From contig JAPDFW010000128.1 of the NCBI GenBank assembly GCA_028826165.1, forward strand, positions 1 to 64,000: a DNA stretch of 64,000 nt, in the 5' to 3' direction. Below, piece by piece: positions 13,405 to 38,957 of the stretch. The position numbers and the translations under genes are program-made. The notes beneath the pieces were generated by a model. It searched no databases, was not told the origin of the DNA, and was given only the letters and a program-made list of their open reading frames with translations. The stretch comes from Anaeramoeba ignava BMAN (lineage: Eukaryota > Protista > Anaeramoebae). Numbering within the stretch: the stretch's first letter is position 1; each line of letters starts with the position of its first letter.

Positions 13405-15204
13405 ATGAATGAAATTTTATTTTTTGGTTATAATCAATCTCCAAAACTTATCAAAAATGAACTAGATAAAATAAGAAAACCAATTCAATTTAAATTTGAA
13501 AATGAAAATGAAAATGAAAATGAAAATGAAAATGAAAAACAAATTAAACAAATTTCATCAGGTTTTTTTGGAACAATTTTACTTTTTAAAAATGGAAAAG
13601 CAATAGAATATCTAAAAGATTCAAAACAAAATCCTTCAAAAATCCAAATTGAAAATATTCAAAAAGTAACTGTTGGTTATCAAAATGAAGCTATTTTAAC
13701 AATAGAAGGAAATGTATTTGCCAAAGGAAGAGATATTAATCCAAAAAATCCAAAAGAATTTATCAATATTTCATCATTAATTGAAGATACAAATGATAGA
13801 ATAATTCAAGATGTTGTTTCTGGAGCTCATTCAATTTATTTATTAACTTCAAATCAAAATACTTATGGATTTGGTTATAATCAATTTGGTCAACTTGGTT
13901 TAGATTCTAAAACACTTGAAAAAACAGAAAAACCAATTTTAATGATGAAAAATGTTTCTAAAATATTTTCAGGAAATTGCTCAAGTCATATTTTTCTTTT
14001 AAATTCAAATCAAGAATTATTTGGATGCGGCGATAATAGATTTGATAAACTTGGATTAGGAAAATCAAGAAAAAAAGAAGAAAGAATCGATAAATTAACC
14101 AAAATCCAAAATATTCCAAAAGGCAAAATAATTGATATTCAATGTGGATATCATTATTCAATAATGTTGACTGAAAATGAAAATCAAAATCAAAATCCAA
14201 AAAGAAAACTTTATTCATGTGGTCATCATCAATATAATGGACTTGGCAAAAATAAATATATTTATGAATTTACTGAAATCAAATCATCTTTATTTGATGA
14301 TGATATTCTTGATTTTTCTGTTGGAGATAATTATACTTTGATTTTAACTTCCAAATCAAAATTGATAGGATTTGGAGATAATTATTTTGGTCAATTAGGA
14401 ACTGGAGATATAGAACATCAACAAATTCCAATTCAAATTGAACTTCCTAAATTAAGATTTAATAAAGATATTTCCAATTATCATATTTATTGTGGTTATT
14501 ACAAATCATTTCTTTATTATTCTCCTCCTTCTTTTTCCAATCTTGAAGAAGATTTGATAAAACTATTTGAAAGAAAAGAATTTTGTAATATTTCATTTAA
14601 AACCAAAAATGGAGAAATAATTAAAGCTCATAAATTAATATTGAAATATAGATTAAATCAAAATCAAAATCAAATTGAAAAACTTCAAGAAATTATTTCA
14701 AAAAAATCAATTAAAGAATCAAATCAAATATTTGAAATGATTTATTCAAATAGAATAATAAATACAATATTATATTCTGAAATTAAAGAAATTATAAATT
14801 TAAATGAAAAAATTGAAGAAACAATGAAAAGAATTTATTTAAATGAAAATGAAAATGAAAATGAAAATGAAAATGAAAAAGATTTTATAATTGAAAGAAA
14901 AGAAAAGAAATATAAATTTCCTAAATTAATATTAATAATGAGAAGTGAATTATATCGAGGAATGTTTTTATCTGTAACAGAAGATAAATCTAATAAAGTT
15001 AAAGATTATAGTGAATTAAGTAATAAATCATTTCAAATATTTGAATATTGGATTTATTCAAATCAAATTAAAGAAGGAATTCAAATTACACAAGAAATTA
15101 TTCAAGAATTAGAAACAGGAATTGATTATTTTCAATTAAATCAAACAAATCCAAATTTATTTGATTTATTAATTAACAAATTTAATAATCAAAATCAAAA
15201 TTAA
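13405..15204 (+). CDS. RCC1-repeat beta-propeller + tandem BTB/POZ protein, copy 1
   Basis: RCC1 motifs GxNxxGQLG, IIDIQCGxxHS, SVGxxxTLIL; BTB motifs FCNISF...AHKLILKYR and FPKLILIMRSELYRGMF...FEYWIYSN. Intronless, 599 aa. Confidence 0.92.
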   Translation: MNEILFFGYNQSPKLIKNELDKIRKPIQFKFENENENENENENEKQIKQISSGFFGTILLFKNGKAIEYLKDSKQNPSKIQIENIQKVTVGYQNEAILTIEGNVFAKGRDINPKNPKEFINISSLIEDTNDRIIQDVVSGAHSIYLLTSNQNTYGFGYNQFGQLGLDSKTLEKTEKPILMMKNVSKIFSGNCSSHIFLLNSNQELFGCGDNRFDKLGLGKSRKKEERIDKLTKIQNIPKGKIIDIQCGYHYSIMLTENENQNQNPKRKLYSCGHHQYNGLGKNKYIYEFTEIKSSLFDDDILDFSVGDNYTLILTSKSKLIGFGDNYFGQLGTGDIEHQQIPIQIELPKLRFNKDISNYHIYCGYYKSFLYYSPPSFSNLEEDLIKLFERKEFCNISFKTKNGEIIKAHKLILKYRLNQNQNQIEKLQEIISKKSIKESNQIFEMIYSNRIINTILYSEIKEIINLNEKIEETMKRIYLNENENENENENEKDFIIERKEKKYKFPKLILIMRSELYRGMFLSVTEDKSNKVKDYSELSNKSFQIFEYWIYSNQIKEGIQITQEIIQELETGIDYFQLNQTNPNLFDLLINKFNNQNQN

Positions 15205-15340
15205 AATAAAAATCAAAATTAAAATCAAAATTAAAATTAAAATTAAAATTAAAATTAAAATTAAAATTAAAATTAAAATTAAAATTAAAATTAAAATTAA
15301 AATTAAAATTAAAATTAAAATTAAAATTAAAATTAAAATT
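15205..15340. repeat. (TAAAAT)n spacer microsatellite; similar tracts at ~17203-17390, 18590-18890, 20945-21030, 22907-22995, 24873-24985 and in intron 5012-5277
   Basis: Directly visible hexamer arrays between every gene of the RCC1-BTB cluster. Confidence 0.9.
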
Positions 15341-15369
15341 CATTTTTTTCATTTTTTTCTTTTCTAAAA

Positions 15370-17202
15370 ATGAATGATTGTTTATTTTTTGGTGAAAATC
15401 AATTTCCAATTCTTATCAAAAATAAGTCATATCTAATCACAAAACCAATTCAATTTAAATTTGAAAATGAAAATGAAAATGAAAATGAAAATGAAAATGA
15501 AAATGAAAATGAAAATGAAAATGAAAAACAAATTAAACAAATTTCATCAAATTCGTTTGCAACAATTTTCCTTTTCAAAAATGGAAAAGCAATAGAATAT
15601 TTAAGAGATTCAAAACAAAATCCTTCAAAAATCCAAATTGAAAATATTCAAAAAGTATCTGTTGGTTATCGAAATGAAGCTATTTTAACAATAGAAGGAA
15701 ATATATTCGCAAAAGGATATCTAATTGATTCAAAAAATCCAAAAGAATTTATCAATATTTCATCATTAATTGAAGATACAAATGATAGAATAATTCAAGA
15801 TATTGTTTCTGGAATTGGTTCAATTTATTTATTAACTTCAAATCAAAATGCTTATGGAATTGGTTTAAATAGATCAGGTCAAATTGGTTTTGATTCTGAA
15901 AAATTTCCAAAAACAGAAAAACCAATTTTAATGATGGAAAATGTTTCTAAAATATTTTCAGGAAATTTGTCTTATCATGTTTTTCTTTTAAATTCAAATC
16001 AAGAATTATTTGGATGCGGATTGAATAGATATACACAACTTGGATTAGGAGAATCAAGAAAAGAAGAAACAATCGATAAATTAACCAAAATCCAAAATAT
16101 TCCAAAAGGCAAAATAATTGATATTCAATGTGGATATGGTCATTCAGTAATGTTGATTGAAAATGAAAATGAATATGAATATGAATATGAATATGAAGAT
16201 GTTGAAAATCCAAAAAGAAAACTTTATTCATGTGGATATTCTGAAAATAATGGACTTGAAAAATTTGAAGACACTGATGAATTTACTGAAATCAAATCAT
16301 TTTTATTTGAAAATGATGATAATATTCTTGAAATTTCTGTTAGTGATTATTATACTTTGATTTTAACTTCTAAATCAAAATTGATAGGATTTGGAATTAA
16401 TTCTTATGGTCAATTAGGAACTGGAGATACAAATAATCAACGAATTCCAATTCAAATTGAACTTCCTAAATTAAGATTTGATGAAGATATTTCTAATTAT
16501 CATCTTTCTTGTGGACTAAGGAAATCATTTCTTTATTATTCTCTTTTTTCTTTTTCCAATCTTGAAGAAGATTTGATAAAATTGTTTGGAAGAAAAGAAT
16601 TTTGTGATATTTCATTTAAAACAGAAAATGGAGAAATAATTGAAGCTCATAAATTAATATTGAAATATAGATTAAATCAAAATCAAGATGAAATTGAAAA
16701 ACTTAAAGAAATCATCTTAAATAAATCAATTAAAGAATCAAATCAAATATTTGAAATGATTTATTCAAATAATTCCAAAATAAATCCAAAATTATATTCT
16801 GAAATTAAAGAAATTATAAATTCCAATGAAAAAATTGAAGAAACAATGAAAAGAATTTATTTAAATGAAAATGAAAAAGATTTTATTATTGAAAGAAAAG
16901 AAAAACAATATAAATTTCCAAAATTAATATTAATAATGAGAAGTGAATTATATCGAGGAATGTTTTTATCTGTAATAAATGATACTTCTAATAAAGTTAG
17001 AGATTATAGTGAATTAAGTAATAAATCATTTCAAATATTTGAATATTGGATTTATTCAAATCAAATTAAAGAAGGAATTAAAATTACACAAGAAATTATT
17101 CAAGAATTAGAAACAGGAATTGATTATTTTCAATTAAATCAAACAAATCCAAATTTATTTGATTTATTAATTAAAAAATTTAATAATCATAATCATAATT
17201 AA
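15370..17202 (+). CDS. RCC1-repeat + BTB protein, copy 2
   Basis: Colinear paralog of 13405-15204, 610 aa. Confidence 0.92.
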   Translation: MNDCLFFGENQFPILIKNKSYLITKPIQFKFENENENENENENENENENENEKQIKQISSNSFATIFLFKNGKAIEYLRDSKQNPSKIQIENIQKVSVGYRNEAILTIEGNIFAKGYLIDSKNPKEFINISSLIEDTNDRIIQDIVSGIGSIYLLTSNQNAYGIGLNRSGQIGFDSEKFPKTEKPILMMENVSKIFSGNLSYHVFLLNSNQELFGCGLNRYTQLGLGESRKEETIDKLTKIQNIPKGKIIDIQCGYGHSVMLIENENEYEYEYEYEDVENPKRKLYSCGYSENNGLEKFEDTDEFTEIKSFLFENDDNILEISVSDYYTLILTSKSKLIGFGINSYGQLGTGDTNNQRIPIQIELPKLRFDEDISNYHLSCGLRKSFLYYSLFSFSNLEEDLIKLFGRKEFCDISFKTENGEIIEAHKLILKYRLNQNQDEIEKLKEIILNKSIKESNQIFEMIYSNNSKINPKLYSEIKEIINSNEKIEETMKRIYLNENEKDFIIERKEKQYKFPKLILIMRSELYRGMFLSVINDTSNKVRDYSELSNKSFQIFEYWIYSNQIKEGIKITQEIIQELETGIDYFQLNQTNPNLFDLLIKKFNNHNHN

Positions 17203-17428
17203 AATTAAAATTAAAATTAAAATTAAAATTAAAATTAATATTAAAAATCAAAACTAAAATTAAAATCAAAATTAAAATTAAAATTAAAATTAAAATTAAA
17301 ATCAAAATTAAAATTAATATTAAAATTAAAATTAAAATTAAAATTAAAATTAAAATCAAAATTAAAATTAAAATCAAAATTAAAATTAAAAATTTTTTCA
17401 TTTTTTTCTTTTCAAATTTTAAATAAAA

Positions 17429-18571
17429 ATGGATAATTATGATTTTGAAAATATTCAGTCATTAGTTATTGATAATGGATCAGGAATGATAAAAGCAGGA
17501 TTTGCAGGAGATGATGCACCAAGAGCAGTTTTCCCGACAATTGTAGGAAGATTAAGACACGAAGAGATTATGATTGGAATGGATCAAAATAAATCATATG
17601 TAGGAGATGAAGCCGAATACAAAAGGGGATTTTCAACAATAAATTATCCAATAGAACATGGAATAGTGAGAAATTGGGAGGAAATGGAAAAAATATGGAA
17701 TCATACATTTTATAATGAATTAAAAGTAGCACCTGAAGAACATCCTGTTTTATTAACGGAATCAATATTGAATCCAAAAAGGAATAGAGAAAAAATGACT
17801 GAGATTATGTTTGAAACTTTCAAACTCCCAGCGTTTTATGTTGCAATCACAGGAATATTATCAGTTTATTCTTCAGGAAGAAATACAGCAATGAATATTG
17901 AAATGGGTGATGGAGTTTGTTTTACTTTTCCCGTTATTGAGGGATATACTTTGCCTCATACAATCACAAAAATCAATTTGGCTGGAAGAGATTTAACTGA
18001 TTATTTAATCCAAAATTTAACTAGAAGAGGATATTTTTTTGAAAATAGTTCACAAAGAGAAATTGTTAAAGATATTAAAGAAAAACTTTGTTATATTGCT
18101 TATGATTTTGAACAGGAAATCCAAAATGCAAATGAATTCCAATCTTCAATTCAGAAACCTTATGAATTGCCTGATGGAAATATTATCACAATTGGAAACG
18201 AAAGATTTACAATCCCTGAAGCTTTGTTTAATCCTTCTTTGATTGGAAAAGATCACAAAGGAATTCATCAAGTGCTTTTTGATTCAATTAACAAATGTGA
18301 TTTGGAAATGAGAAAAGATTTTTATTCAAATATTCTGATTTCTGGTGGATCTTCAATGTTTCAAGGAATTCAAGACAGAATTGAAAAAGAAGTTTCAAAA
18401 TTAGCTCCAAAAAATATGAAAATAAAAATTATTGCTCCTCCTGAAAGGAAATATTCTGTTTGGATTGGTGGATCAATTTTGGCTTCTCTTTCTACTTTTC
18501 AACAAATGTGGATTTTAAAAAAAGAATTTGACGAATTTGGTTCTTCTATTGTTCACAAAAAATGTTTTTGA
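17429..18571 (+). CDS. Divergent actin paralog, intronless
   Basis: [75 protein letters not shown]-terminal HKKCF; many substitutions relative to conventional actin. Confidence 0.95.
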
Positions 18572-18922
18572 ATCCGAATCCGAATCCAAATCAAAATCAA
18601 AATTAAAATTAAAATTAAAATTAAAAATTAAAATTAAAATCAAAATTAAAATTAAAATTAAAATTTAAATTAAAATTAAAATTAAAATTAAAATTAAAAT
18701 TAAAATTAAAATTAAAATTAAAATTAAAATTAAAATTAAAATTAAAATTAAAATTAAAATTAAAATTAAAATTAAAATTAAAATTAAAATCAAAATTAAA
18801 ATTAAAATTAAAATTAAAATTAAAAATTAAAATTAAAATTAAAATTAAAATTAAAATTAAAATTAAAATTAAAATTAAAATTAAAATCCAAAAATATTTT
18901 TTTCATTTTTTTCTTTTTTAAA

Positions 18923-20929
18923 ATGAATGAAATTTTATTTTGGGGAAGAAATAAATTTCCAATTCTTTTCAAAAATAAACCAGAAGAAATAATAAAACCA
19001 ATTCAATTTAAATTTGAAAATGAAAATGAAAATGTAAAACAAATTAAACAAATTTTTTCAGGTTATTCTTCAGTAGTTTTCCTTTTCGAAAATGGAAAAG
19101 CAATAAAATATTCAAATGAAGAAAATGATTCAAATCCAAAACCTTCAAAAATGCCAATTAAAAATATTCAAAAAGTATCTGTTGGTCATTTTATTGAAAC
19201 TATTTTAACAATAGAAGGAAATTTATTTGCCAAAGGATATTATATAAATTCAAAAAATCCAAAAGAATTTACTAATATTTCATCATTAATTGAAGATACA
19301 AATGATAGAATAATTGAAGATTTTGTTTCTGGAGATAGTGCAATTTACTTATTAACTTCAAATCAAAATGCTTATGGAATTGGCTTCAATGAATATGCTA
19401 AACTTGGAGTTGATCCTAAAAAACTTCCAAAATCAGAAGAACCAATTTTAATGATGAAAAATGTTTCTAAAATATTTTCAGGAACTTCTTCAATTTCCGT
19501 TTTTCTTTTAAATTCAAATCAAGAATTATTTGGATGCGGATATAATTATGATTATCAACTTGGATTAGGAAAATCAAGAAGAGCAACAACAATCGATAAA
19601 TTAACCCAAATACAAAATATTCCAAAAGGCAAAATAATTGATATTCAATGTGGATTTTATCATTCAATAATGTTGATTGAAAATGAAAATGAAAATCCAA
19701 AAAGAAAACTTTATTCATGTGGGTATTATAGATATAATGGACTTGGACAAGATAAAGGATATACTTATGAATTTACTGAAATCAAATCATCTTTATTTGA
19801 AAATGATTATATTCTTGAAATTTCTGTTGGATTTATTGAGACTTTGATTTTAACTTCTAATTCAAAATTAATAGAATTTGGAGATAATAATTGGGGTCAA
19901 TTAGGAGATGATAATAATAAATATCGGTTAATTCCAATTCAAGTTGAGCATTCTGAATTAAAATTTAATGAAGATATTTCCAATTATCATATTTCTTGTG
20001 GATATCACAAATCATTTATTTATTATTCTCCTTCTTTTTCCAATCTTGAAGAAGATTTGATAAAATTATTTGAAAGAAAAGAATTTTGTGATATTTCATT
20101 TAAAACCAAAAATGGAGAAATAATTGAAGCTCATAAATTAATATTGAAATATAGATTAAAAGATGAAAATCAAAATGAAAAACTTCAAGAAATTATTTCA
20201 AAAAAATCAATTAAAGAATCAAATCAAATATTTGAAATGATTTATTCAAACAGAATAATAAATCCAAAATTATATTCAGAAATTAAAGAAATTATAAATT
20301 CAAATGAAAAAATTGAAGAAACAATGAAAAGAATTTATTTAAATGAAATTGAAAATGAAAATGAAAAAGATTTTATTATTGAAAGAAAAGAAAAACAATA
20401 TAAATTTCCTAAATTAATATTAATAATGAGAAGTGAATTATATCGAGGAATGTTTTTATCTGTAACTGATGATACTTCAAATAAAGTTACAGATTATAGT
20501 GAATTAAGTAATAAATCATTTCAAATATTTGAATATTGGATTTATTCAAATCAAATTAAAGATGGAATTAAAATTACACAAGAAATAATTAATGAAATTC
20601 AAATTGGAATTGATTATTTTCAATTAAATCAAACAAATCCAAATTTATTTGATTTATTAATTAAAAAATTTAATAATCAAAATCCAAAAAAAAAAGAAAA
20701 AGAAGAACGAAAAAAAAAACAAAAACAAAAAGAAAAAGAAGAAAAAGAAAAACGAGAACAAGAAAAACGAGAACAAGAAAAACGAGAACAAGAAAAACGA
20801 GAACAAGAAATCCAAAAACAAAAAGAACAAGAAGAAAAAGAAAAAGAAGAAAAAGAAGAACAAGAAATCCAAAAACAAAAAGAAAGAGAAATATTAAAAA
20901 GAAAACAGAAAAAATGTTCGATTTTTTGA
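18923..20929 (+). CDS. RCC1-repeat + BTB protein, copy 3, with charged coiled-coil tail and CaaX-like end (CSIF)
   Basis: Same scaffold as the other copies plus an (EQEKR)n extension ending KRKQKKCSIF. Confidence 0.92.
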   Translation: MNEILFWGRNKFPILFKNKPEEIIKPIQFKFENENENVKQIKQIFSGYSSVVFLFENGKAIKYSNEENDSNPKPSKMPIKNIQKVSVGHFIETILTIEGNLFAKGYYINSKNPKEFTNISSLIEDTNDRIIEDFVSGDSAIYLLTSNQNAYGIGFNEYAKLGVDPKKLPKSEEPILMMKNVSKIFSGTSSISVFLLNSNQELFGCGYNYDYQLGLGKSRRATTIDKLTQIQNIPKGKIIDIQCGFYHSIMLIENENENPKRKLYSCGYYRYNGLGQDKGYTYEFTEIKSSLFENDYILEISVGFIETLILTSNSKLIEFGDNNWGQLGDDNNKYRLIPIQVEHSELKFNEDISNYHISCGYHKSFIYYSPSFSNLEEDLIKLFERKEFCDISFKTKNGEIIEAHKLILKYRLKDENQNEKLQEIISKKSIKESNQIFEMIYSNRIINPKLYSEIKEIINSNEKIEETMKRIYLNEIENENEKDFIIERKEKQYKFPKLILIMRSELYRGMFLSVTDDTSNKVTDYSELSNKSFQIFEYWIYSNQIKDGIKITQEIINEIQIGIDYFQLNQTNPNLFDLLIKKFNNQNPKKKEKEERKKKQKQKEKEEKEKREQEKREQEKREQEKREQEIQKQKEQEEKEKEEKEEQEIQKQKEREILKRKQKKCSIF

Positions 20930-21070
20930 AAAGAAATTATTAATAAAATTAAAAATCAAAATTAAAATCAAAATCAAAATCCAAATTAAAATCAAAATCA
21001 AAATCAAAATTAAAATCATAATTAAAAACCAAAATCAATATTCATTTTTCATTTTTTTTCTTTTCTAAAA

Positions 21071-22906
21071 ATGAATGATTGTTTATTTTTTGGTCAAAAT
21101 GAATATCCAATTCTTATCAAAAATAAACCAGATAAAATAATAAAACCAATTCAATTTAAATTTGAAAATGAAAATGAAAATGAAAATGAAAATGAAAATG
21201 AAAATGAAAATGAAAATGAAAATGAAAATGAAAATGAAAATGAAATTAAACAAATTTCATCAGGAAATTTTTCAACAATTTTCCTTTTTAAAAATGGAAA
21301 AGCAATAGAATATTTAAATGAAAATGATTCAAAACAAAATCCTTCAAAAATTCAAATTGAAGAAAATATTCAAAAAGTAACTGTTGGTTATCGAAATGAA
21401 GCTATTTTAACAATAGAAGGAAATGTATTTTCCAAAGGAAGTGATATTAATTCAAAAAATCTAAATGAATTTATCAATATTTCATCATTAATTGAAGATA
21501 AAAATAATAGAATAATTCAAGATATTGTTTCTGGATTAAGTTCAATTTATTTATTAACTTCAAATCAAAATGCTTATGGAATTGGTTCAAATTATTGGTG
21601 TCAACTTGGTTTTGATTATGAAACACTTAAAGAAACAGAAAAACCAATTTTAATGATGGAAAATGTTTCTAAAATATTTTCAGGAAATAATTCACGTCAT
21701 GTTTTTCTTTTAAATTCAAATCAAGAATTATTTGGATGTGGTTGGAATGAACATGCTCAACTTGGATTAGGAGAATCAAGAAAAAAAGAAACAAAAATCC
21801 AAAAATTAACCAAAATCCAAAATATTCCAAAAGGTAAAATAATTGATATTCAATGTGGTGATTATCATTCCATAATGTTGATTGAAGATGAAAATGAAAA
21901 CACAAAAAGAAAACTTTATTCATGTGGATATTATTCATATAATGGACTTGGCAAAGATCAAAATACAAAAGAATTTACTGAAATCAAATCATCTTTATTT
22001 GAAAATGATAATAATATTCTTGATTTTTCTGTTGGAAGTGCTCATACTTTGATTTTAACATCTAAAGGGAAAGTGATAGGATTTGGACATAATGAACTTG
22101 GCCAATTAGGAAGTGGAGATACAAAAAATCAATTAATTCCAATTCAAATTGAACTTCCTAAATTAAGATTTAATGAAAATATTTCCAACTATCATATTTA
22201 TTGTGGATATTACAGATCATTTATTTATTATTATTCTCCTTCTTTTTCCAATCTTGAAGAAGATTTGATAAAATTATTTAAAAGAAAAGAATTTTGTAAT
22301 ATTTCATTTAAAACAGAAACTGGAGAAATAATCAAAGTTCATAAATTAATATTGAAATATAGATTAAATCAAAATCAAAATCAAATTGAAAAACTTAAAG
22401 AAATTATTTCAAAAAAATCAATTAAAGAATCAAATCAAATATTTGAAATGATTTATTCAAATAATTCCAAAATAAATCCAAAATTATATTTTGAAATTAA
22501 AGAAATTATAAATTCAAATGAAAAAATTGAAGAAACAATGAAAAGAATTTATTTAAATGAAAATGAAAATGAAAATGAAAAAGATTTTATAATTGAAAGA
22601 AAAGAAAAGAAATATAAATTTCCTAAATTAATATTAATAATGAGAAGTGAATTATATCGAGGAATGTTTTTATCTGTTACAGATGATACTTCTAATAAAG
22701 TTACAGATTATAGTGAATTAAGTAATAAATCATTTGAAATATTTGAATATTGGATTTATTCAAATCAAATTAAAGATGAAATTCAAATTACACAAGAAAT
22801 AATTGATGAAATAGAAACAGGAATTGATTATTTTCAATTAAATCAAACAAATCCAAATTTATTTGATTTATTAATTAATAAATTTAATAATCAAAATCAA
22901 AATTAA
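21071..22906 (+). CDS. RCC1-repeat + BTB protein, copy 4
   Basis: Colinear paralog, 611 aa. Confidence 0.92.
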   Translation: MNDCLFFGQNEYPILIKNKPDKIIKPIQFKFENENENENENENENENENENENENENEIKQISSGNFSTIFLFKNGKAIEYLNENDSKQNPSKIQIEENIQKVTVGYRNEAILTIEGNVFSKGSDINSKNLNEFINISSLIEDKNNRIIQDIVSGLSSIYLLTSNQNAYGIGSNYWCQLGFDYETLKETEKPILMMENVSKIFSGNNSRHVFLLNSNQELFGCGWNEHAQLGLGESRKKETKIQKLTKIQNIPKGKIIDIQCGDYHSIMLIEDENENTKRKLYSCGYYSYNGLGKDQNTKEFTEIKSSLFENDNNILDFSVGSAHTLILTSKGKVIGFGHNELGQLGSGDTKNQLIPIQIELPKLRFNENISNYHIYCGYYRSFIYYYSPSFSNLEEDLIKLFKRKEFCNISFKTETGEIIKVHKLILKYRLNQNQNQIEKLKEIISKKSIKESNQIFEMIYSNNSKINPKLYFEIKEIINSNEKIEETMKRIYLNENENENEKDFIIERKEKKYKFPKLILIMRSELYRGMFLSVTDDTSNKVTDYSELSNKSFEIFEYWIYSNQIKDEIQITQEIIDEIETGIDYFQLNQTNPNLFDLLINKFNNQNQN

Positions 22907-23030
22907 AATTAAAATCAAAATCAAAATTAAAATTAAAATTAAAATTTAAAATTAAAATTAAAATTAAAATTAAAATTAAAATCAAAATTAAAATTCCAAA
23001 AATATTTTTTTCATTTTTTTCTTTTCAAAA

Positions 23031-24872
23031 ATGAATGATTGTTTATTTTGGGGTGAAAATGAATATCCAATTCTTATCAAAAATAAACCAAATAAAATAA
23101 TAAAACCAATTCAATTTAAATTTGAAAATGAAAATGAAAATGAAAATGAAAATGAAAATGAAAATGAAAACGAAAATGAAAATGAAAATGAAAATGAAAA
23201 TAAAAAACAAATTAAACAAATTTCATCAGGAATATTTTCAACAATTTTCCTTTTTGAAAATGGAAAAGCAATAGAATATTTAAATGAAAATGATTCAAAT
23301 CAAAATCTTGAAAAAATTCAAATTGAAGAAAATATTCAAAAAGTAACTGTTGGTTATCGAAATGAAGCTATTTTAACAATAGAAGGAAATGTATTTGCCA
23401 AAGGAAGTGATATTAATCTAAAAAATCCAAATGAATTTATCAATATTTCATCATTAATTGAAGATAAAAATGATAGAATAATTCAAGATATTGTTTCTGG
23501 ATTAAGTTCAATTTATTTATTAACTTCAAATCAAAATGCTTATGGAATTGGTTCAAATTATTGGTGCCAACTTGGTTTTGATTATGAAACACTTGAAGAA
23601 ACAGAAAAACCAATTTTAATGATGAAAAATGTTTCTAAAATATTTTCAAGAATTTCTTCACGTCATGTTTTTCTTTTAAATTCAAATCAAGAATTATTTG
23701 GATGTGGTTGGAATGAACATGCTCAAGTTGGATTAGGAGAATCAAGAAAAAAAGAAAGAAAAATCCAAAAATTAACCAAAATCCAAAGTATTCCAAAAGG
23801 CAAAATAATTGATATTCAATGTGGAATATATCATTCAATAATGTTGATTGAAGATGAAAACACAAAAAGAAAACTTTATTCATGTGGAAATTATTCATAT
23901 AATGGACTTGGCAAAGATCAAAATACTTATGAATTTACTGAAATCAAATCATCTTTATTTGAAAATGATAATAATATTCTTGATTTTTCTGTTGGAAGTG
24001 CTCATACTTTGATTTTAACATCTAAAGGGAAAGTGATAGGATTTGGACATAATGAATTTGGCCAATTAGGAACTGGAAATACAAAAAATCAATCAATTCC
24101 AATTCAAATTGAACTTCCTAAATTAAGATTTAATGAAGATATTTCCAATTATCATATTTATTGTGGTGCTTATAGATCATTTATTTATTATTCTCCTCCT
24201 TCTTTTTCCAATCTTGAAGAAGATTTGATAAAATTATTTAGAAGAAAAGAATTTTGTAATATTTCATTTAAAACCAAAAATGGAGAAATAATCAAAGCTC
24301 ATAAATTAATATTAAAATATAGATTAAATCAAAATCAAAATCAAATTGAAAAACTTCAAGAAATTATTTCAAATAAATCAATTAAAGAATCAAATCAAAT
24401 ATTTGAAATGATTTATTCAAACAATTCCAAAATAAATCCAAAATTATATTCTGAAATTAAAGAAATTATAAATTCAAATGAAAAAATTGAAGAAACAATG
24501 AAAAGAATTTATTTAAATGAAAATGAAAATGAAAATGAAAATGAAAAAGATTTTATTATTGAAAGAAAAGAAAAACAATATAAATTTCCAAAATTAATAT
24601 TAATAATGAGAAGTGAATTATATCGAGGAATGTTTTTATCTGTAATAAATGATACTTCTAATAAAGTTACAGATTATAGTGAATTAAGTAATAAATCATT
24701 TCAAATATTTGAATATTGGATTTATTCAAATCAAATTAAAGATGAAATTCAAATTACACAAGAAATTATTGATGAAATTCAAATTGGAATTGATTATTTT
24801 CAATTAAATCAAACAAATCCAAATTTATTTGATTTATTAATTAATAAATTTAATAATCAAAATCAAAATTAA
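23031..24872 (+). CDS. RCC1-repeat + BTB protein, copy 5 (closest to copy 4)
   Basis: Colinear paralog, 613 aa; shares most variable loops with copy 4. Confidence 0.92.
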   Translation: MNDCLFWGENEYPILIKNKPNKIIKPIQFKFENENENENENENENENENENENENENKKQIKQISSGIFSTIFLFENGKAIEYLNENDSNQNLEKIQIEENIQKVTVGYRNEAILTIEGNVFAKGSDINLKNPNEFINISSLIEDKNDRIIQDIVSGLSSIYLLTSNQNAYGIGSNYWCQLGFDYETLEETEKPILMMKNVSKIFSRISSRHVFLLNSNQELFGCGWNEHAQVGLGESRKKERKIQKLTKIQSIPKGKIIDIQCGIYHSIMLIEDENTKRKLYSCGNYSYNGLGKDQNTYEFTEIKSSLFENDNNILDFSVGSAHTLILTSKGKVIGFGHNEFGQLGTGNTKNQSIPIQIELPKLRFNEDISNYHIYCGAYRSFIYYSPPSFSNLEEDLIKLFRRKEFCNISFKTKNGEIIKAHKLILKYRLNQNQNQIEKLQEIISNKSIKESNQIFEMIYSNNSKINPKLYSEIKEIINSNEKIEETMKRIYLNENENENENEKDFIIERKEKQYKFPKLILIMRSELYRGMFLSVINDTSNKVTDYSELSNKSFQIFEYWIYSNQIKDEIQITQEIIDEIQIGIDYFQLNQTNPNLFDLLINKFNNQNQN

Positions 24873-25020
24873 AATCAAAATTAAAATCAAAATTAAAATT
24901 AAAATTAAAATTAAAAATTAAAATTAAAATTAAAATCAAAACCAAAATTAAAATTAAAATTAAAATTAAAATCAAAATTAAAATTCCAAAAATATTTTTT
25001 TCATTTTTTTCTTTTCAAAA

Positions 25021-26769
25021 ATGAATGGTTGTTTATTTTTTGGAAGAAATAAATTTCCAACTCTCATAAAAAATAAACCAAATGAAATAATAAGAAAACT
25101 AATTCAATTTAAATTTGAAAATGAAAATGAAAAACAAATTAAACAAATTTCATCAAGTTTTTTTGCAACAATTTTCCTTTTTAAAAATGGAAAAGCAATA
25201 AAATATTTAAAATATTCAAAACAAAATCCTCAAAAAATCCAAATTGAAGAAAATATTCAAAAAGTAACTGTTGGTTTTCAAAATGAAGCTATTTTAACAA
25301 TAGAAGGAAATGTATTTGCCAAAGGAAGTGATATTAATCTAAAAAATCTAAATGAATTTATCAATATTTCATCATTAATTGAAGATACAAATGATCGAAT
25401 AATTCAAGATATTGTTTCTGGAATTGGTTCAATTTATTTATTAACTTCAAATCAAAATGCTTATGGAATTGGTTCAAATTATTGGTGTCAACTTGGTTTT
25501 GATTCTGAAACACTTCAAAAAACAGAAAAACCAATTTTAATGATGGAAAATGTTTCTAAAATATTTTCAGGAAATACTTCAAAATATGTTTTTCTTTTAA
25601 ATTCAAATCAAGAATTATTTGGATGCGGAGATAATACTTTTGGCCGACTTGGATTAGGAGAATCAAGAAAAGATCGGATAATCGATAAATTAACCAAAAT
25701 CCAAAATATTCCAAAAGGCAAAATAATTGATATTCAATGTGGATTTACTCATTCAATAATGATGATTGAAAATGAAAATCAAAATCCAAAAAGAAAACTT
25801 TATTCATGTGGAATTTATGAATATAATGGATTTGGCAAATATACAAATGAATTTACTGAAATCAAATCACCTTTATTTGAAAATGATAATATTATTGATT
25901 TTTCTGTTGGAAATGCTCATACTTTGATTTTAACATCCAATTCAAAATTGATTGAATTTGGATATAATTATTTTGGTCAATTAGGAACTGGAGATACAAA
26001 TGATCAATCAATTCAAATTCAAATTGAACTTCCTAAATTAAGATTTAATGAAGATATTTCCAATTATCATATTTATTGTGGTTATTACAACTCATTTCTT
26101 TATTATTCTCCTTCTTTTTCCAATCTTGAAGAAGATTTGATAAAATTATTTAGAAGAAAAGAATTTTGTAATATTTCATTTAAAACCGAAAATGGAGAAA
26201 TAATCAAAGCTCATAAATTAATATTAAAATATAGATTAAATCAAAATCAAAATCAAATTGAAAATCTTAAAGAAATTATTTCAAAAAAATCAATTAAAGA
26301 ATCAAATCAAATATTTGAAATGATTTATTCAAACAGAATAATAAATCCAATATTATATTCTGAAATTAAAGAAATTATAAATTTAAATGAAAAAATTGAA
26401 GAAACAATGAAAAGAATTTATTTAAATGAAAATGAAAATGAAAATGGAAAAGATTTTATAATTGAAAGAAAAGAAAAACAATATAAATTTCCAAAATTAA
26501 TATTAATAATGAGAAGTGAATTATATCGAGGAATGTTTTTATCTGTAACAGAAGATAAATCTAATAAAGTTAGAGATTATAGTGAATTAAGTAATAAATC
26601 ATTTCAAATATTTGAATATTGGATTTATTCAAATCAAATTAAAGATGAAATTCAAATTACTCAAGAAATCATTGATGAAATTGAAATTGGAATTGATTAT
26701 TTTCAATTAAATCAAACAAATCCAAATTTATTTGATTTATTAATTAACAAATTTAATTATCAAAATTAA
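25021..26769 (+). CDS. RCC1-repeat + BTB protein, copy 6
   Basis: Colinear paralog, 582 aa. Confidence 0.92.
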   Translation: MNGCLFFGRNKFPTLIKNKPNEIIRKLIQFKFENENEKQIKQISSSFFATIFLFKNGKAIKYLKYSKQNPQKIQIEENIQKVTVGFQNEAILTIEGNVFAKGSDINLKNLNEFINISSLIEDTNDRIIQDIVSGIGSIYLLTSNQNAYGIGSNYWCQLGFDSETLQKTEKPILMMENVSKIFSGNTSKYVFLLNSNQELFGCGDNTFGRLGLGESRKDRIIDKLTKIQNIPKGKIIDIQCGFTHSIMMIENENQNPKRKLYSCGIYEYNGFGKYTNEFTEIKSPLFENDNIIDFSVGNAHTLILTSNSKLIEFGYNYFGQLGTGDTNDQSIQIQIELPKLRFNEDISNYHIYCGYYNSFLYYSPSFSNLEEDLIKLFRRKEFCNISFKTENGEIIKAHKLILKYRLNQNQNQIENLKEIISKKSIKESNQIFEMIYSNRIINPILYSEIKEIINLNEKIEETMKRIYLNENENENGKDFIIERKEKQYKFPKLILIMRSELYRGMFLSVTEDKSNKVRDYSELSNKSFQIFEYWIYSNQIKDEIQITQEIIDEIEIGIDYFQLNQTNPNLFDLLINKFNYQN

Positions 26770-32394: not shown

Positions 32395-32583
32395 AATTAA
32401 ATTTAAATTTAAAATTCAATTCAAATTCTGATTTTAAATTTAATTTTGATTTTGATTTTGATTTTGATTTTAATTTGAATTTTGATTTTAATTTTAATTT
32501 TAATTTGAATTTTGATTTTAATTTATAAATTAAATATTAAATTAAATCTATTCTTATTTTTTATTTCGATTTTGATTTTGATT

Positions 32584-32900
32584 TTAATTATTAAATTTTT
32601 TAATTAATAAATCAAATAAATTTGGATTTGTTTGATTTAATTGAAAATAATCAATTCCAATTTGAATTTCATGAATAATTTCTTGAGTAATTTGAATTTC
32701 ATCTTTAATTTGATTTGAATAAATCCAATATTCAAATATTTGAAATGATTTATTACTTAATTCACTATAATCTGTAACTTTATTAGAAGTATCATTTGTT
32801 ACAGATAAAAACATTCCTCGATATAATTCACTTCTCATTATTAATATTAATTTAGGAAATTTATATTGTTTTTCTTTTCTTTCAATTATAAAATCTTTTT
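32584..32900 (-). pseudogene. 3' fragment of an RCC1-BTB gene (second BTB only)
   Basis: KDFIIERKEKQYKFPKLILIMRSELYRGMF...FNN*. Homology stops at ~32900, where the 145-bp array begins. Confidence 0.88.
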
Positions 32901-33470
32901 AATTAATTTATTTCAAAAATGGAATAAAGAATATTAAATAATTAAATTTGAAATTAATTATATTTTATATATTTTATTAATATTTCTTTATTTAAAATAA
33001 TATAAAATTATTCTCAATAATTTAATAAAATTAATAAAATATTTTCATTAATTTATTTCAAAAATGGAATAAAGAATATTAAATAATTAAATTTGAAATT
33101 AATTATAACTTATATATTTTATTAATATTTCTTTATTTAAAATAATATAAAATTATTCCCAATAATTTAATAAAATAAATAAAATATTTTAATTAATTTA
33201 TTTCAAAAATGGAATAAAGAATATTAAATAATTAAATTTGAAATTAATTATATTTTATATATTTTATTAATATTTCTTTATTTAAAATAATATAAAATTA
33301 TTCTCAATAATTTAATAAAATTAATAAAATATTTTAATTAATTTATTTCAAAAAAATAAAATAAAAATATTAAATAATTAAATTTTAAAATTAATTATAT
33401 TTTATATATTTTATCAATATTTCTTTATTTAAAAATAATATAAAATTATTCCCAATAATTTAATAAAATT
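32901..33470. repeat. Four tandem copies of a 145-bp AT-rich unit
   Basis: Marker tttcaaaaa recurs at 32911, 33056, 33201 and 33346 (period 145). Confidence 0.9.
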
Positions 33471-36120: not shown

Positions 36121-36695
36121 AAATATTTTTAAATAATAAAATACTTAAATCTAAAACAATAAATTATTATTTTAAACATAAAATTAAATATTAAATTATA
36201 TTTTTAAATTAATTTATAAATTAAATATTAAATTAAACCTATTCTTATTTTTTATATTTATATGTTAAATATTTAAATAATAAAATATTTAAATCTAAAA
36301 CATTAAATTATTATTTTAAAAATAAAATTAAATATTAAATTATATTTTTAAATTAATTTATAAATTAAATATTAAATTAAACCTATTCTTATTTTTATAT
36401 TTATATGTTAAATATTTTAAATAATAAAATATTTATATCTAAAACAATAAATTAATATTTTAAACATAAAATTAAATATTAAATTATATTTCTAAATTAT
36501 TTTATTAATTAAATATTAAATTAAACTTATTTTTATATTTTTATTTTTATATTTATATGTTAAATATTTAAATAATAAAATATTTAAATCTAAAACATTA
36601 AATTATTATTTTAATAATAAAATTAAATATTAAATTATATTTTTAAATTAATTTATAAATTAAATATTAAATTAAATCTATTCTTATTTTTTATT
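36121..36695. repeat. Four tandem copies of a ~144-bp AT-rich unit
   Basis: Marker ctaaaaca recurs at 36151, 36295, 36439 and 36590. Confidence 0.88.
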
Positions 36696-36699
36696 GATT

Positions 36700-38424
36700 T
36701 TAATTATTAAATTTATTAATTAATAAATCAAATAAATTTGGATTTGTTTGATTTAATTGAAAATAATCAATTCCAATTTGGATTTCTTCAATAATTTCTT
36801 GTGTAATTTGAATTTCATCTTTAATTTGATTTGAATAAATCCAATATTCAAATAATTGAAATGATTTATTACTTAATTCACTATAATCTGTAACTTTATT
36901 AGAAGTATCATTTGTTACAGATAAAAACATTCCTCGATATAATTCACTTCTCATTATTAATATTAATTTTGGAAATTTATATTGTTTTTCTTTTCTTTCA
37001 ATAATAAAATCTTTTTCATTTTCATTTTCATTTAAATAAATTCTTTTAATTGTTTCTTCAATTTTTTCATTTGAATTTATAATTTCTTTAATTTCAGAAT
37101 ATAATTTTGGATTTATAATTCTATTTGAATAAATCATTTCAAATATTTGATTTGATTCTTTAATTGATTTATTTGAAATAATTTCTTGAAGTTTTTCAAT
37201 TTCATTTTGATTTAATCTATATTTCAATATTAATTTATGAGCTTCAATTATTTCTCCATTTTTGGTTTTAAATGAAATATTACAAAATTCTTTTCTTCTA
37301 AATAATTTTATCAAATCTTCTTCAATATTGGAAAAAGAAGAATGAGAATAATAAAGAAATGATTTGTAAGCACCACAATAAATATGATAATTGGAAATAT
37401 CTTCATTAAATCTTAATTTAGGAAGTTCAATTTGAATTGGAATGAATTGATTATTTATATCTCCAATTCCTAATTCACCCCAATAATTATTTCCAAATCC
37501 TATCACTTTCCCTTTAGAAGTTAAAATCAAAGTATGTTCATATCCAACAGAAATTTCAAGAATATCATTATCATTTTCAAATAAAGATGATTTGATTTCA
37601 GTAAATTCTTAAGTATTTTGATATTTTCCAAGTCCATTATATAGAGAATATCCACATGAATAAAGTTTTCTTTTTGGATTTTGATTTTGATTTTCATTTT
37701 CAATCAACATTATTGAATAAGCAAATCCACATTGAATATCAATTATTTTACCTTTTGGAATATTTTGAATTTTGGTTAATTTTTGGATTCTTGTTTCTTG
37801 TTTTCTTGATTCTCCTAATCCAAGTTGACTATATTCATTATTACCGCATCCAAATAATTCTTGATTTGAATTTAAAAGAAAAACATTATTTGAAGAAATT
37901 CCTGAAAATATTTTAGAAACATTTTTCATCATTAAAATTGGTTTTTCTGTTTCATGATTTACATATGAATCAAAACCAAGTTGATAATATTGATTTGAAC
38001 CAATTCCATAAGCATTTTGATTTGAAGTTAATAAATAAATTGAGCTATCTCCAGAAACAATATCTTGGATTATTCTATCATTTTTATCTTCAATTAATAA
38101 TGAAATATTGATAAATTCTTTTGAATTTTTTGGATTAATGTCTTTTCCTTTGGCAAATACATTTCCTTCTTTTGTTAAAATAGCTTCATTTCTATAACCA
38201 ACAGTTACTTTTTGAATATTTTCTTCAATTTGGATTTTTTCAGGTTTTTGATTTGGATCATTTTCATTTAAATATTCTATTGCTTTTCCATTTTTAAAAA
38301 GGAAAATTGTTGAAAATATTCCTGATGAAATTTGTTTAATTTGTTTTTCATTTTCATTTTCATTTTCATTTTCAAATTTAAATTGAATTGGTTTTATTAT
38401 TTTTTCTGATTTATTTTTGAAAAG
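36700..38424 (-). pseudogene. RCC1-BTB pseudogene: start codon deleted, in-frame TAA at 37609-37611
   Basis: Colinear with copies 1-6 from ...NKSEKIIKPIQFKF onward. No ATG at the homologous position; TAA where paralogs have TAT, AAA, GAT or AAT. Confidence 0.88.
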
Positions 38425-38509: not shown

Positions 38510-38564
38510 TTGTTTTGTTTTGTTTTGTTTTGTTTTGTTTTGTTTTGTTTTTGTTTTAGTTTTG

Positions 38565-38595
<31 letters not shown>

Positions 38596-38813
38596 TGTTT
38601 TGTTTTTGTTTTGTTTTTGTTTTGTTTTGTGTTTTGTTTTGTTTTTTTTTTTTTTTTTGTTTTGTTTTTGTTTTTTTTTTTTTTTGTTTTTTTTTTTTGT
38701 TTTTTTGTTTTTTTTTTTTTTTTTTTTGTTTTGTTTTTGTTTTGTTTTGTTTTGGTTTTGTTTTGTTTTTGTTTTGTGTTGTTTTGTTTTGTTTTTGTTT
38801 AGTTTTGTTTTTG

Positions 38814-38860
<47 letters not shown>

Positions 38861-38922
38861 GTTTTGTTTTGTTTTGTTTTGTTTTGTTTTGTTTTGTTTT
38901 GTTTTGTTTTTGTTTTGTGTTG

Positions 38923-38955: not shown

Positions 38956-38957
<2 letters not shown>

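What the first reader, a model, noticed from the sequence alone, without database searches (positions are those of the whole stretch)
13405..26769. Hypervariable RCC1-BTB array: candidate diversified receptor repertoire for Cullin-3 ubiquitination
Seen: six intact tandem paralogs (plus two relics) have a nearly constant BTB half and propeller strands, while substitutions concentrate in about 12 short loops following conserved Gly residues. Examples across copies 1-6: VSG[AH/IG/DS/LS/LS/IG]; CG[DNRFDK/LNRYTQ/YNYDYQ/WNEHAQ/WNEHAQ/DNTFGR]; QCG[YHY/YGH/FYH/DYH/IYH/FTH]; SCG[HHQ/YSE/YYR/YYS/NYS/IYE]; FG[DNYF/INSY/DNNW/HNEL/HNEF/YNYF]. The loops are rich in Y/W/F/H/R/D, like antibody CDRs. Established: BTB domains are Cul3 adaptors and RCC1 propellers bind ligands through loop faces. 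Inference: a variable-recognition / constant-effector family under diversifying selection, possibly targeting symbiont or pathogen proteins for ubiquitination.
Basis: partly seen in the sequence, partly recalled or inferred. Interest (0 to 1): 0.85.

Follow-up and report, generated by a model that had tools for sequence, protein, structure and literature searches.

The report
Thousand-gene hypervariable RCC1-BTB receptor family
The anaerobic amoeba Anaeramoeba ignava carries about 1,260 near-identical genes for a propeller-plus-BTB protein that differ almost only in 14 short loops on one face of the propeller, which looks like a large inherited repertoire of binding proteins that the genome papers I could search do not describe.

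Summary
The window, from Anaeramoeba ignava, holds six intact intronless genes for an RCC1 propeller fused to a tandem BTB module. Two relics lie outside the given coordinates. A 30-nt BTB motif occurs 1,259 times in the 42.8 Mb genome.

All 37 propeller positions with at least 2 bits of entropy lie in the two loop classes that share one propeller face. They align with the dimer-interface residues of UVR8. The BTB half is almost invariant, even at synonymous sites.

The diversifying-selection claim is only partly supported.
- My own M2a versus M1a test is hugely significant (omega 5.5).
- The family recombines freely, so tree-based tests are unreliable.
- Synonymous change is also raised at and beside the loops, which gives a local omega of about 0.9.
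- The two youngest duplicate pairs have no loop changes.
- Loop residues are rich in Tyr, Ser, Asp, Glu, Arg and Trp, far from the AT-biased neutral expectation.

My best reading is a scaffold homogenised by concerted evolution, with loop diversity kept by selection. Cullin-3 binding, the targets and expression are untested. First-stage readers of this scan noted the same family 49 times elsewhere in this genome.

The parts
13405..15204 (+). Copy 1, an intact RCC1-BTB-BTB gene of 599 aa
   Evidence: ORF; Pfam RCC1/RCC1_2/WD40_RLD + BTB
15370..17202 (+). Copy 2, intact, 610 aa
17429..18571 (+). Divergent actin gene (380 aa) lying inside the array. It is not a family member.
   Evidence: Pfam Actin, E = 8e-135
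18923..20929 (+). Copy 3, intact, 668 aa. It carries an extra Lys/Glu-rich tail (20684-20926) that ends in CSIF, a CaaX-like prenylation box (20915-20926).
   Evidence: The same K-rich + C[LSF]IF tail is found in 10 of 59 sampled ORFs and 15 of 120 annotated relatives.
21071..22906 (+). Copy 4, intact, 611 aa. This is the reference copy for all residue numbers in this report.
   Evidence: AlphaFold2 model, mean pLDDT 86.3
21071..22234 (+). Seven-bladed RCC1 propeller of copy 4 (aa 1-388). The N-terminal strands 4-9 and 22-28 close blade 7. A disordered Asn/Glu repeat occupies aa 31-58 (21161-21244).
   Evidence: AF2 secondary structure; Foldseek best hits are RCC1, HERC2 RLD, RPGR and UVR8, TM by target 0.7-0.83; phmmer to UVR8, E = 5e-33
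21095..22216 (+). Span holding the 14 hypervariable loop patches of copy 4: aa 9-12 (21095-21106), 65-67 (21263-21271), 107-108 (21389-21394), 124-128 (21440-21454), 156-157 (21536-21541), 173-177 (21587-21601), 206-209 (21686-21697), 225-229 (21743-21757), 264-265 (21860-21865), 287-290 (21929-21940), 323-324 (22037-22042), 340-343 (22088-22099), 353-355 (22127-22135) and 380-382 (22208-22216).
   Evidence: Entropy profiles; 36-61 nucleotide alleles per patch among 68 genes; all patches lie in strand1>2 or strand3>4 loops
22235..22903 (+). Constant C-terminal module of copy 4 (aa 389-611). It consists of two BTB folds in tandem: BTB-1 at about aa 394-495, which lacks one strand, and a complete BTB-2 at about aa 504-610.
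   Evidence: Pfam BTB in two stretches; AF2 model of this half, pLDDT 88; best Foldseek hits are tethered Miz1-BCL6 and Miz1-Nac1 POZ dimers, TM 0.52-0.57 over about 250 columns; single BTBs including SPOP in complex with Cul3 also match
23031..24872 (+). Copy 5, intact, 613 aa. It is the closest relative of copy 4 (92% aa identity).
25021..26769 (+). Copy 6, intact, 582 aa. It is a mosaic: 96-97% nucleotide identity to copy 5 over aa 106-180, but 81-82% over aa 211-240.
36718..38424 (-). Relic 1, a near full-length pseudogene. The first 14 codons and the start codon are lost, there is one internal stop, and a (TTGTT)n tract lies upstream.
   Evidence: tblastn and translation; it still carries the exact 30-nt BTB motif
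32575..32904 (-). Relic 2, a fragment holding the C-terminal 110 aa (BTB-2).
   Evidence: tblastn at 89-95% identity; exact 30-nt motif

Best explanation
The array is a small part of a family of about 1,260 loci that I found only in Anaeramoeba ignava. The roughly one thousand intact copies is my extrapolation. Each gene encodes a cytosolic protein with the RCBTB/IBtk architecture: a seven-bladed RCC1 propeller followed by a tandem BTB-BTB module.

Shown here:
- The BTB module and the propeller scaffold are almost identical in all copies, even at synonymous sites.
- 14 short loops, all on one face of the propeller, carry 36-61 different alleles each among 68 genes.
- The alleles combine almost at random, so nearly every gene has a unique surface.
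- The family behaves like a recombining population, with common dimorphic scaffold sites in linkage equilibrium and mosaic tandem neighbours.
- Synonymous diversity peaks at the loops and decays within a few codons.

Inferred:
- Gene conversion or unequal crossing-over homogenises the scaffold.
- Selection keeps the loop variants from being overwritten and keeps each gene's own loops intact. The result is a germline repertoire of binding specificities on one constant module.
- By analogy with RCBTB1 and other BTB proteins, the constant module docks the bound ligand to a Cullin-3-type ubiquitin ligase, or at least oligomerises. About 15% of members are membrane-anchored through a Lys-rich C[LSF]IF prenylation tail.

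The ligands are unknown. Proteins of prey or symbiotic bacteria, of viruses or mobile elements, or of the amoeba's own expanded families are all possible.
For: Architecture: Pfam RCC1 + BTB in all six copies. The AF2 models have pLDDT 86 and 88. Foldseek matches RCC1-like propellers and tethered BTB dimers. [quoted passage not shown]

Organism and family size: every relative, from the closest down to 34% identity, is named A. ignava. A 30-nt motif gives 1,259 hits at up to 2 mismatches against 0 for the reversed control, and 8 hits in the window, which equals the 6 genes plus 2 relics.

One face: all 37 high-entropy positions lie in the strand1>2 and strand3>4 loops or the strand residues adjoining them, against 0 of 76 in the opposite-face loops. 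Copy 4 residues S323/A324 and H340 align with UVR8 W285/R286 and W302, which lie at the UVR8 dimer interface (PMC7455749).

Recombining family: r2 is about 0.02 beyond 10 nt. Four-gamete incompatibility rises from 0.60 to 0.82 with distance (permutation p < 0.001). Background divergence sits at a plateau of 4.1% synonymous and 11.7% nonsynonymous per codon whatever the loop identity (rho = 0.03). Sites with common variants supply 82% of it. Identity between tandem copies is mosaic. Loops change in blocks between sister genes.

Selection on the loops:
- Third-position transition diversity falls from 0.100 at the loops through 0.061, 0.053, 0.032 and 0.028, to 0.020 in the BTB half.
- Flanking codons have omega 0.21 but a synonymous rate 3.3 times background.
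- The residue composition is far from the AT-biased neutral expectation.
- The two youngest duplicate pairs differ at 50 codons, none of them among the 56 hypervariable codons.

Cullins are present at 7 or more loci. The prenylation tails were counted.
Against: - No binding, ubiquitination or expression data exist.
- Cullin-3 binding was not tested. The best fold matches of the BTB module are transcription-factor POZ dimers, which do not use Cul3, and no BACK or 3-box follows BTB-2.
- The local omega at the loops is 0.73-0.90, not above 1. Neutral drift of unconstrained loops, protected from conversion by their own divergence, is therefore not excluded by that test alone.
- The 'youngest duplicates' evidence rests on one duplicated segment holding two genes, which could be allelic contigs.
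- The one-face argument uses propeller topology and a sequence alignment to UVR8, not measured coordinates.
- I sampled about 70 of about 1,260 loci.
Confidence: 0.55

Rival explanations
1. The loops are simply unconstrained. The family was amplified and is homogenised by gene conversion. The loops drift neutrally and, once diverged, block conversion through heteroduplex rejection, so they stay different. On this view there is no functional repertoire.
For: Omega at the hypervariable codons is 0.73-0.90 and not different from 1 when their own synonymous rate is used. Copies 4 and 5 differ at 7 of 28 loop codons, about the neutral expectation. Raised synonymous diversity beside the loops is also expected if conversion tracts stop there.
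Against: - Loop composition is far from AT-biased mutational equilibrium. Ile, Lys and Leu are 3-10 times depleted. Glu, Asp, Arg, Ser, Ala, Gly and Trp are 4-54 times enriched.
- Only one face varies, and surface loops of the other face are as constant as the strands.
- There are 0 changes at 56 loop codons in the youngest duplicates, against about 8 expected under neutrality.
- Nearly all sampled copies keep open frames.
Confidence: 0.15
2. A targeted diversification mechanism acts on the loops. This could be local hypermutation, or templated short-patch conversion directed at the loop codons. It would actively generate variation, as in chicken immunoglobulin genes or the antigen families of parasites.
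For: - The synonymous rate is about 7 times background at the loop codons and about 3 times at the two codons on either side.
- More than half of the loop differences between sister genes involve 2-3 nucleotides of a codon.
- Flanking synonymous differences co-occur with changed loops, 7.5% against 1.1%.
- Derived G/C at third positions falls from 6.5% to 0.9% with distance from the loops.
Against: There are no loop changes at all in the two youngest duplicate pairs, although 50 other codons differ. The loop differences between copies 4 and 5 are mostly single-base changes. No dedicated machinery or template is evident. The same signals are expected from old, selected loop alleles in a recombining family.
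Confidence: 0.1
3. The proteins are not ubiquitin-ligase adaptors. The RCC1-like propeller would act as an exchange factor or binding partner for the amoeba's expanded small GTPases or other endogenous families, with the BTB pair serving only for oligomerisation or scaffolding.
For: RCC1-like domains include GTPase exchange factors. The automatic names given to relatives (claret, secretion-regulating GEF, RCC1-like exchange factor) reflect this. Anaeramoeba genomes have greatly expanded Rab families (PMC11550330). About 15% of members carry a Lys-rich prenylation tail like that of small-GTPase partners at membranes. The variable face is the one that carries functional interfaces in UVR8.
Against: The genome paper stresses the Rab expansion most in A. 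flamelloides (almost 400 Rabs), and I saw no A. flamelloides protein among the relatives I looked up. About 1,260 loci far outnumber even those ~400 Rabs. Exchange-factor catalysis would call for conserved rather than hypervariable contact residues. The RCC1 + BTB pairing is the architecture of the reported CUL3 adaptor RCBTB1 (PMC4974088).
Confidence: 0.2

Closest known systems
RCBTB1/RCBTB2 and IBtk (animal RCC1 + BTB proteins)
   Same: The domain order is the same: an RCC1-like propeller followed by BTB. Automatic annotation and ESM Atlas neighbours place the family here. RCBTB1 is reported as a putative CUL3 substrate adaptor (PMC4974088).
   Different: Animals have one or two conserved genes. 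Here there are about 1,260 loci with hypervariable loops. Identity to any non-ignava protein is low, and Cul3 binding is untested.
MATH-BTB (BATH) and F-box families of Caenorhabditis and plants
   Same: These are lineage-specific expansions of ubiquitin-ligase substrate adaptors with a constant ligase-docking domain and a fast-evolving substrate-binding domain. They have been proposed to target foreign proteins (Thomas 2006, Genome Res 16:1017, cited in PMC4091423; its content is from my own knowledge). See also PMC12951971 and PMC3030570.
   Different: The recognition domain differs: an RCC1 propeller rather than MATH or FBA. The copy number per genome size is several-fold higher. Variation is confined to 14 discrete loops on a nearly invariant DNA scaffold. 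The host is a free-living metamonad amoeba.
UVR8 / RCC1 propellers
   Same: The seven-bladed fold is the same. The hypervariable positions coincide with the GWRHT and GWGW-type loop residues that form the UVR8 dimer interface (PMC7455749).
   Different: These are single-copy proteins with conserved interfaces and no BTB.
Recombining variant gene families (var genes of Plasmodium, VSG genes of trypanosomes, MHC peptide-binding regions)
   Same: They show mosaic paralogs and frequent ectopic exchange. Conserved frameworks carry hypervariable binding patches, and synonymous diversity is raised next to the selected codons (from my own knowledge).
   Different: Those are surface or secreted molecules. 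These proteins have no signal peptide or transmembrane segment and are expected to be cytosolic.

Membership tests
RCC1-like domain (RLD) propeller | Seven RCC1 repeats folding into a seven-bladed beta-propeller | tested here: met
   Pfam RCC1, RCC1_2 and WD40_RLD. phmmer to UVR8, RCC1, HERC and RPGR structures. AF2 model plus Foldseek, TM by target up to 0.83.
RCBTB / IBtk-type architecture | An RCC1-like propeller followed in the same chain by BTB domain(s) | tested here: met
   Pfam BTB in two stretches after the propeller. The C-terminal half folds like a tethered BTB dimer. The nearest Atlas clusters are named RCBTB1 and Btk-binding protein-related.
RCBTB / IBtk-type architecture | Orthology to animal RCBTB1/2 | not tested
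   No phylogeny with animal sequences was made. All relatives I looked up, down to 34% identity, are A. ignava.
Cullin-3 (CRL3) substrate adaptor | BTB fold | tested here: met
   (includes matches to SPOP BTB in complex with Cul3, 4eoz)
Cullin-3 (CRL3) substrate adaptor | Cul3-contacting motif and a 3-box/BACK helical pair after the BTB | tested here: inconclusive
   BTB-2 ends at the C-terminus with its last core helix, and no extra helical pair follows it. Contact residues were not compared because no Cul3-bound reference sequence could be brought in by reference.
Cullin-3 (CRL3) substrate adaptor | Physical binding to a Cul3 orthologue of the same organism | not testable with these tools
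No complex prediction was run.
Gene family under diversifying (positive) selection | dN/dS > 1 at the variable sites | tested here: inconclusive
   M2a versus M1a gives 2dlnL = 832 and omega 5.5. With a class-specific synonymous rate, omega is 0.73-0.90. Recombination violates the tree assumption.
Gene family under diversifying (positive) selection | Variable sites clustered on one ligand-binding surface | tested here: met
   from topology, plus the UVR8 alignment.
Prenylated (CaaX) proteins, for a subset of members | C-terminal Cys-aliphatic-aliphatic-X preceded by a basic stretch | tested here: met
   Copy 3 ends ...KRKQKKCSIF. Of 59 sampled ORFs, 10 end in K-rich + CLIF or CSIF, as do 15 of 120 annotated relatives (CLIF, CSIF or CFIF). 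Prenylation itself is untested.

The most novel reading that the evidence does not exclude
A free-living protist maintains a germline repertoire of about a thousand cytosolic recognition proteins whose 14 loops are combined almost at random. Ectopic gene conversion would both homogenise the scaffold and reshuffle the loop cassettes. That would make it an intracellular counterpart of the variable receptor families of animal immunity, used to tag foreign proteins (from prey, symbiont, virus or mobile element) for ubiquitination, partly at membranes.
Probability: 0.3. Interest if true: 0.9.

Novelty: new variant of a known kind. Interest (0 to 1): 0.78.

Why it matters
If this reading holds, about 5% of the DNA of a small protist genome is devoted to one family of binding proteins with CDR-like loops. 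That would be among the largest such families reported for a microbial eukaryote.

The organism is notable for housing bacterial symbionts in a special membrane organelle and for taking up many foreign genes. The family therefore offers a concrete handle on how a single-celled eukaryote might tell many intracellular or engulfed partners apart.

It is also a clean natural example of concerted evolution of a scaffold with preserved hypervariable patches. Finally, it shows how standard dN/dS site tests can mislead in a recombining gene family. The genome papers I could search do not mention the family.

Tried and rejected
Expression is untested.
Copies were collected instead from two own-genome searches.
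- Cul3 complex prediction: not run, because no A. ignava cullin sequence could be fetched by reference.
- Per-site two-rate grid (FUBAR-like, my own code): only 12 sites passed P > 0.9, because single-site synonymous rates are too noisy. It was replaced by pooled class fits.
- Selecting 'recently shared segments' by zero differences at scaffold codons: this failed, because the scaffold is so uniform that unrelated paralogs also pass.
- Subtelomeric location: the window start shows no telomere-like repeat, so the idea was dropped.
- Dictyostelid origin, my first guess from the composition: rejected.
- Supplement search of the genome paper for RCC1, BTB and PANTHER ids: it found only LGT tallies for A. 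flamelloides RCC1-like genes and nothing on this family. Some files were cut when stored.


Full report
**What is in the window.**
The window is about 20% G+C. Between 13405 and 26769 it holds six intact, intronless ORFs of 582-668 aa on the + strand, separated by 120-350 bp of simple AAAATT-type repeats. A divergent actin gene (17429-18571) sits between copies 2 and 3. Every copy scores for RCC1, RCC1_2 and WD40_RLD over roughly aa 70-385, and for BTB in two stretches after that. Two further copies lie outside the stated coordinates on the minus strand. One is a pseudogene at 36718-38424 with a lost start and one stop. The other is a 110-aa C-terminal fragment at 32575-32904.

**Organism and family size.**
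The best 120 database relatives are all named Anaeramoeba ignava, and the window's own proteins sit on a 149,219-bp contig of that assembly. Two searches of the window's own 42.8 Mb genome each returned 72-74 scored full-length copies at 77-86% identity (the window's own copies score higher). The two lists hardly overlap, and each came from about 3,000 first-look candidates. A 30-nt stretch of the second BTB domain occurs 1,259 times at up to 2 mismatches, against 0 for the reversed control. The window has 8 hits, which equals its 6 genes plus 2 relics. At about 1.8 kb per gene, this family is about 5% of the genome.

All more distant RCC1-BTB relatives that I looked up, down to 34% identity, are also A. 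ignava. The genome paper (PMC11550330) does not mention RCC1, BTB, ubiquitin or cullin in its main text. The supplements held here carry only LGT tallies of RCC1-like genes for the sister species. No paper in the library links Anaeramoeba with this family: the only one listed that holds both 'Anaeramoeba' and 'BTB' is a Preaxostyla genomics paper with a single BTB mention. Only copies 3 and 6 exist as exact annotated proteins, so the public gene models for copies 1, 2, 4 and 5 differ or are missing.

**Structure.**
AlphaFold2 on copy 4 gives mean pLDDT 86. Residues 1-388 form a seven-bladed propeller closed by the N-terminal strands, with a disordered Asn/Glu repeat at aa 31-58. Foldseek matches RCC1, HERC1/2, RPGR and UVR8 propellers.

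The C-terminal half, modelled alone, has pLDDT 88. Its best matches are single-chain tethered Miz1-BCL6 and Miz1-Nac1 POZ dimers over about 250 columns. It also matches single BTB domains, including SPOP bound to Cul3. The constant module is therefore a tandem BTB-BTB pseudo-dimer. BTB-2 ends at the C-terminus with no BACK or 3-box after it. The ESM Atlas neighbours are clusters named RCBTB1 and Btk-binding protein-related, from arthropods, chordates and oomycetes. The architecture is therefore old and widespread, while the expansion was found only in this species.

**Where the variation lies.**
In 38 and then 70 paralogs the entropy profile is a comb. There are peaks of 2-3.5 bits at aa 9-12, 65-67, 107-108, 124-128, 156-157, 173-177, 206-209, 225-229, 264-265, 287-290, 323-324, 340-343, 353-355 and 380-382. 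Elsewhere the profile is near zero.

I used the model's strands to name four strands per blade. All 37 positions with at least 2 bits then fall in the strand1>2 and strand3>4 loops or at their strand ends. None of the 76 residues in the strand2>3 and strand4>1' loops does (Fisher p = 9e-7). In an antiparallel four-stranded blade, successive loops alternate between faces, so the variable loops share one face. This is an inference from topology, because I had no model coordinates.

Independently, phmmer aligns copy 4 S323/A324 with UVR8 W285/R286, H340 with W302, and the conserved F338 with the buried W300. W285 and W302 lie at the UVR8 dimer interface, and W300 is in the buried ring (PMC7455749).

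Each patch has 36-61 nucleotide alleles among 68 genes. The number of patches shared by two genes follows the expectation for independent assortment, apart from a handful of close pairs. The BTB half has mean entropy 0.22 bits. It contains 36-nt windows that are 99.8% identical at the DNA level across 70 genes.

**Selection tests.**
I wrote a codon-likelihood program with fixed topology and scaled branch lengths.
- On 38 genes, M0 gives omega 0.34.
- M1a gives lnL -16196.9 and M2a gives -15780.7, so 2dlnL = 832.
- Under M2a, 6% of sites have omega 5.5. Thirty sites pass P > 0.95, and 28 of them lie in the loop patches or on the loop B path leading into strand 4.

- I defined the hypervariable set from the six window copies only and fitted a separate synonymous rate on 32 other genes. 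This gives alpha 5.3 (against 1.2 elsewhere) and omega 0.73.
- A second cross-validation on 30 new genes gives alpha 6.0 and omega 0.90, with an interval of roughly 0.6-1.35. Forcing the background alpha is rejected (2dlnL = 70.6) and would give omega 6.7.
- In that second fit, the two codons on either side of a loop have omega 0.21 but alpha 2.9. The scaffold has alpha 0.87 and omega 0.37, and the BTB half has 0.95 and 0.16.
- Third-position transition diversity decays with distance from a loop codon: 0.100, 0.061, 0.053, 0.032 and 0.028, then 0.020 in the BTB half.
- Derived G/C at third positions follows the same gradient.

**The family recombines.**
- Among 172 informative sites, r2 is 0.12 within 10 nt and 0.02 (about 1/n) beyond that.
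- All four gametes occur in 60-82% of site pairs, and the share rises with distance (permutation p < 0.001).
- Background divergence between two genes sits at a plateau of 4.1% synonymous and 11.7% nonsynonymous codons whatever their loop identity (Spearman 0.03).
- Sites with common variants (142 of them) supply 82% of that divergence.
- The same dimorphisms recur in independent pairs.
- Tandem neighbours are mosaics. For example, copy 6 is 96-97% identical to copy 5 over aa 106-180 and 81-82% over aa 211-240.
- In sister pairs the changed and unchanged loops form blocks.
- Synonymous differences in the three codons beside a loop are 7.5% when the loop differs and 1.1% when it does not (p = 3e-7). 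The scaffold between loops differs less sharply, 3.05% against 1.85%.

A star tree with independent mutation would give rare variants rather than common ones in equilibrium. Gene conversion or unequal crossing-over among paralogs is therefore the simplest account. It also means that any tree-based omega is unreliable here.

**What argues for function of the loops.**
- Composition: Tyr is 18%, and Ser, Glu, Gln, Asp, Arg, Ala, Gly and Trp are 4-54 times the expectation from third-position base composition. Ile, Lys and Leu are 3-10 times depleted.
- Only one face varies.
- The two youngest duplicate pairs are two adjacent genes duplicated between contigs C129 and C45. They differ at 50 codons, and none of these is among the 56 hypervariable codons. 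About 8 would be expected under neutrality, and about 16 if loops were overwritten as often as the scaffold (the expectations are my arithmetic). This rests on one duplicated segment, which could be allelic.
- Nearly all sampled copies have open frames.

Copies 4 and 5 differ at 7 of 28 loop codons, mostly by single bases. That is about the neutral rate or below it, so I see no sign of ongoing rapid positive selection or hypermutation.

**Reading.**
The data fit a family in which exchange among paralogs keeps the scaffold and the BTB module uniform. Loop variants are old, are kept from being overwritten and are conserved within each gene. The peaks of linked synonymous diversity are what long-maintained variants produce in a recombining population. 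The rivals are:
- neutral loops that merely block conversion;
- an active loop-directed mutator or conversion process;
- a non-ligase function, for instance as partners of the expanded small GTPases.

**Function.**
That the constant module recruits a Cullin-3 ligase is an analogy with RCBTB1 (PMC4974088) and with BTB adaptors in general. The genome has at least seven cullin loci, but I could not fetch them. No complex was predicted, and this step is reported as not done.

About 13-17% of members, including copy 3, end in a Lys-rich tail plus CLIF, CSIF or CFIF. This is a CaaX-type box, which predicts geranylgeranylation and membrane attachment (by established CaaX rules).

**Comparison and novelty.**
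Expanded, fast-evolving ubiquitin-ligase adaptor families are known in nematodes and plants (Thomas 2006, cited in PMC4091423; PMC12951971; PMC3030570). This case is a new variant of that kind for four reasons:
- the recognition domain is different (an RCC1 propeller);
- there are about 1,260 loci in a 43 Mb protist genome;
- variation is restricted to 14 discrete loops on a DNA-level constant scaffold;
- the population-like recombination is clear.

First-stage readers of this scan flagged the same family 49 times elsewhere in this genome, and none of those notes had been followed up.

Noticed in passing
window 38956-44013 (-): A 1,685-aa ORF has about 42% G+C in a 20% G+C genome. It carries seven He_PIG putative Ig domains and a sarcoglycan/dystroglycan-type domain. 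It resembles the 'dystroglycan-related' lateral-transfer candidates tallied in the genome paper's supplement. It sits directly beside the RCC1-BTB pseudogene, separated from it by a (TTGTT)n tract at 38510-38957.
   Followed up: partly
window 20684-20926 (tail of copy 3) and loci L016, L023, L026, L030, L038, L042, L044, L059, L060: A subset of family members has an added Lys/Glu-rich tail ending in CLIF, CSIF or CFIF (a CaaX-like box). The other members stop at ...KFNNQN(QN). The tail looks like an optional 3' cassette that would send some members to membranes.
   Followed up: partly
window 17429-18571 (+): A divergent 380-aa actin gene is embedded between copies 2 and 3 of the array.
   Followed up: no
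window 34108-35739 (-): An ORF combines a BTB domain with a TLDc domain. It is an unrelated BTB protein lying between the two relics.
   Followed up: no
window 32884-33470 and 36128-36694: Two arrays of about 145-bp tandem repeats (about 4 copies each, 90-94% matches) lie next to the two relics. They may mark the breakpoints where copies were truncated.
   Followed up: no
window 9998-12385, 1277-2758, 45050-46308 and 47275-48690: There are very long 12- and 18-nt satellite arrays of 108-132 copies each. In the 2-kb bin 10001-12000, which the first array (9998-12385) fills, G+C drops to 3%.
   Followed up: no
L043 (G000 C129:123303-128069) and L056 (C45:24008-28777): A two-gene segment of the family is present on two contigs at 96-98% nucleotide identity. 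It is either a very recent segmental duplication or a pair of allelic contigs in the assembly.
   Followed up: partly
window copies 1, 2, 4 and 5: The exact translations of these four intact ORFs are absent from the public protein collection. Some annotated relatives are about 1,040 aa long and look like fusions of neighbouring copies. The public gene models for this family appear unreliable.
   Followed up: partly
window 26828-28162 (-): An iron-hydrogenase-like gene (large-subunit C-terminal domain plus small-subunit domain) lies directly downstream of the array.
   Followed up: no
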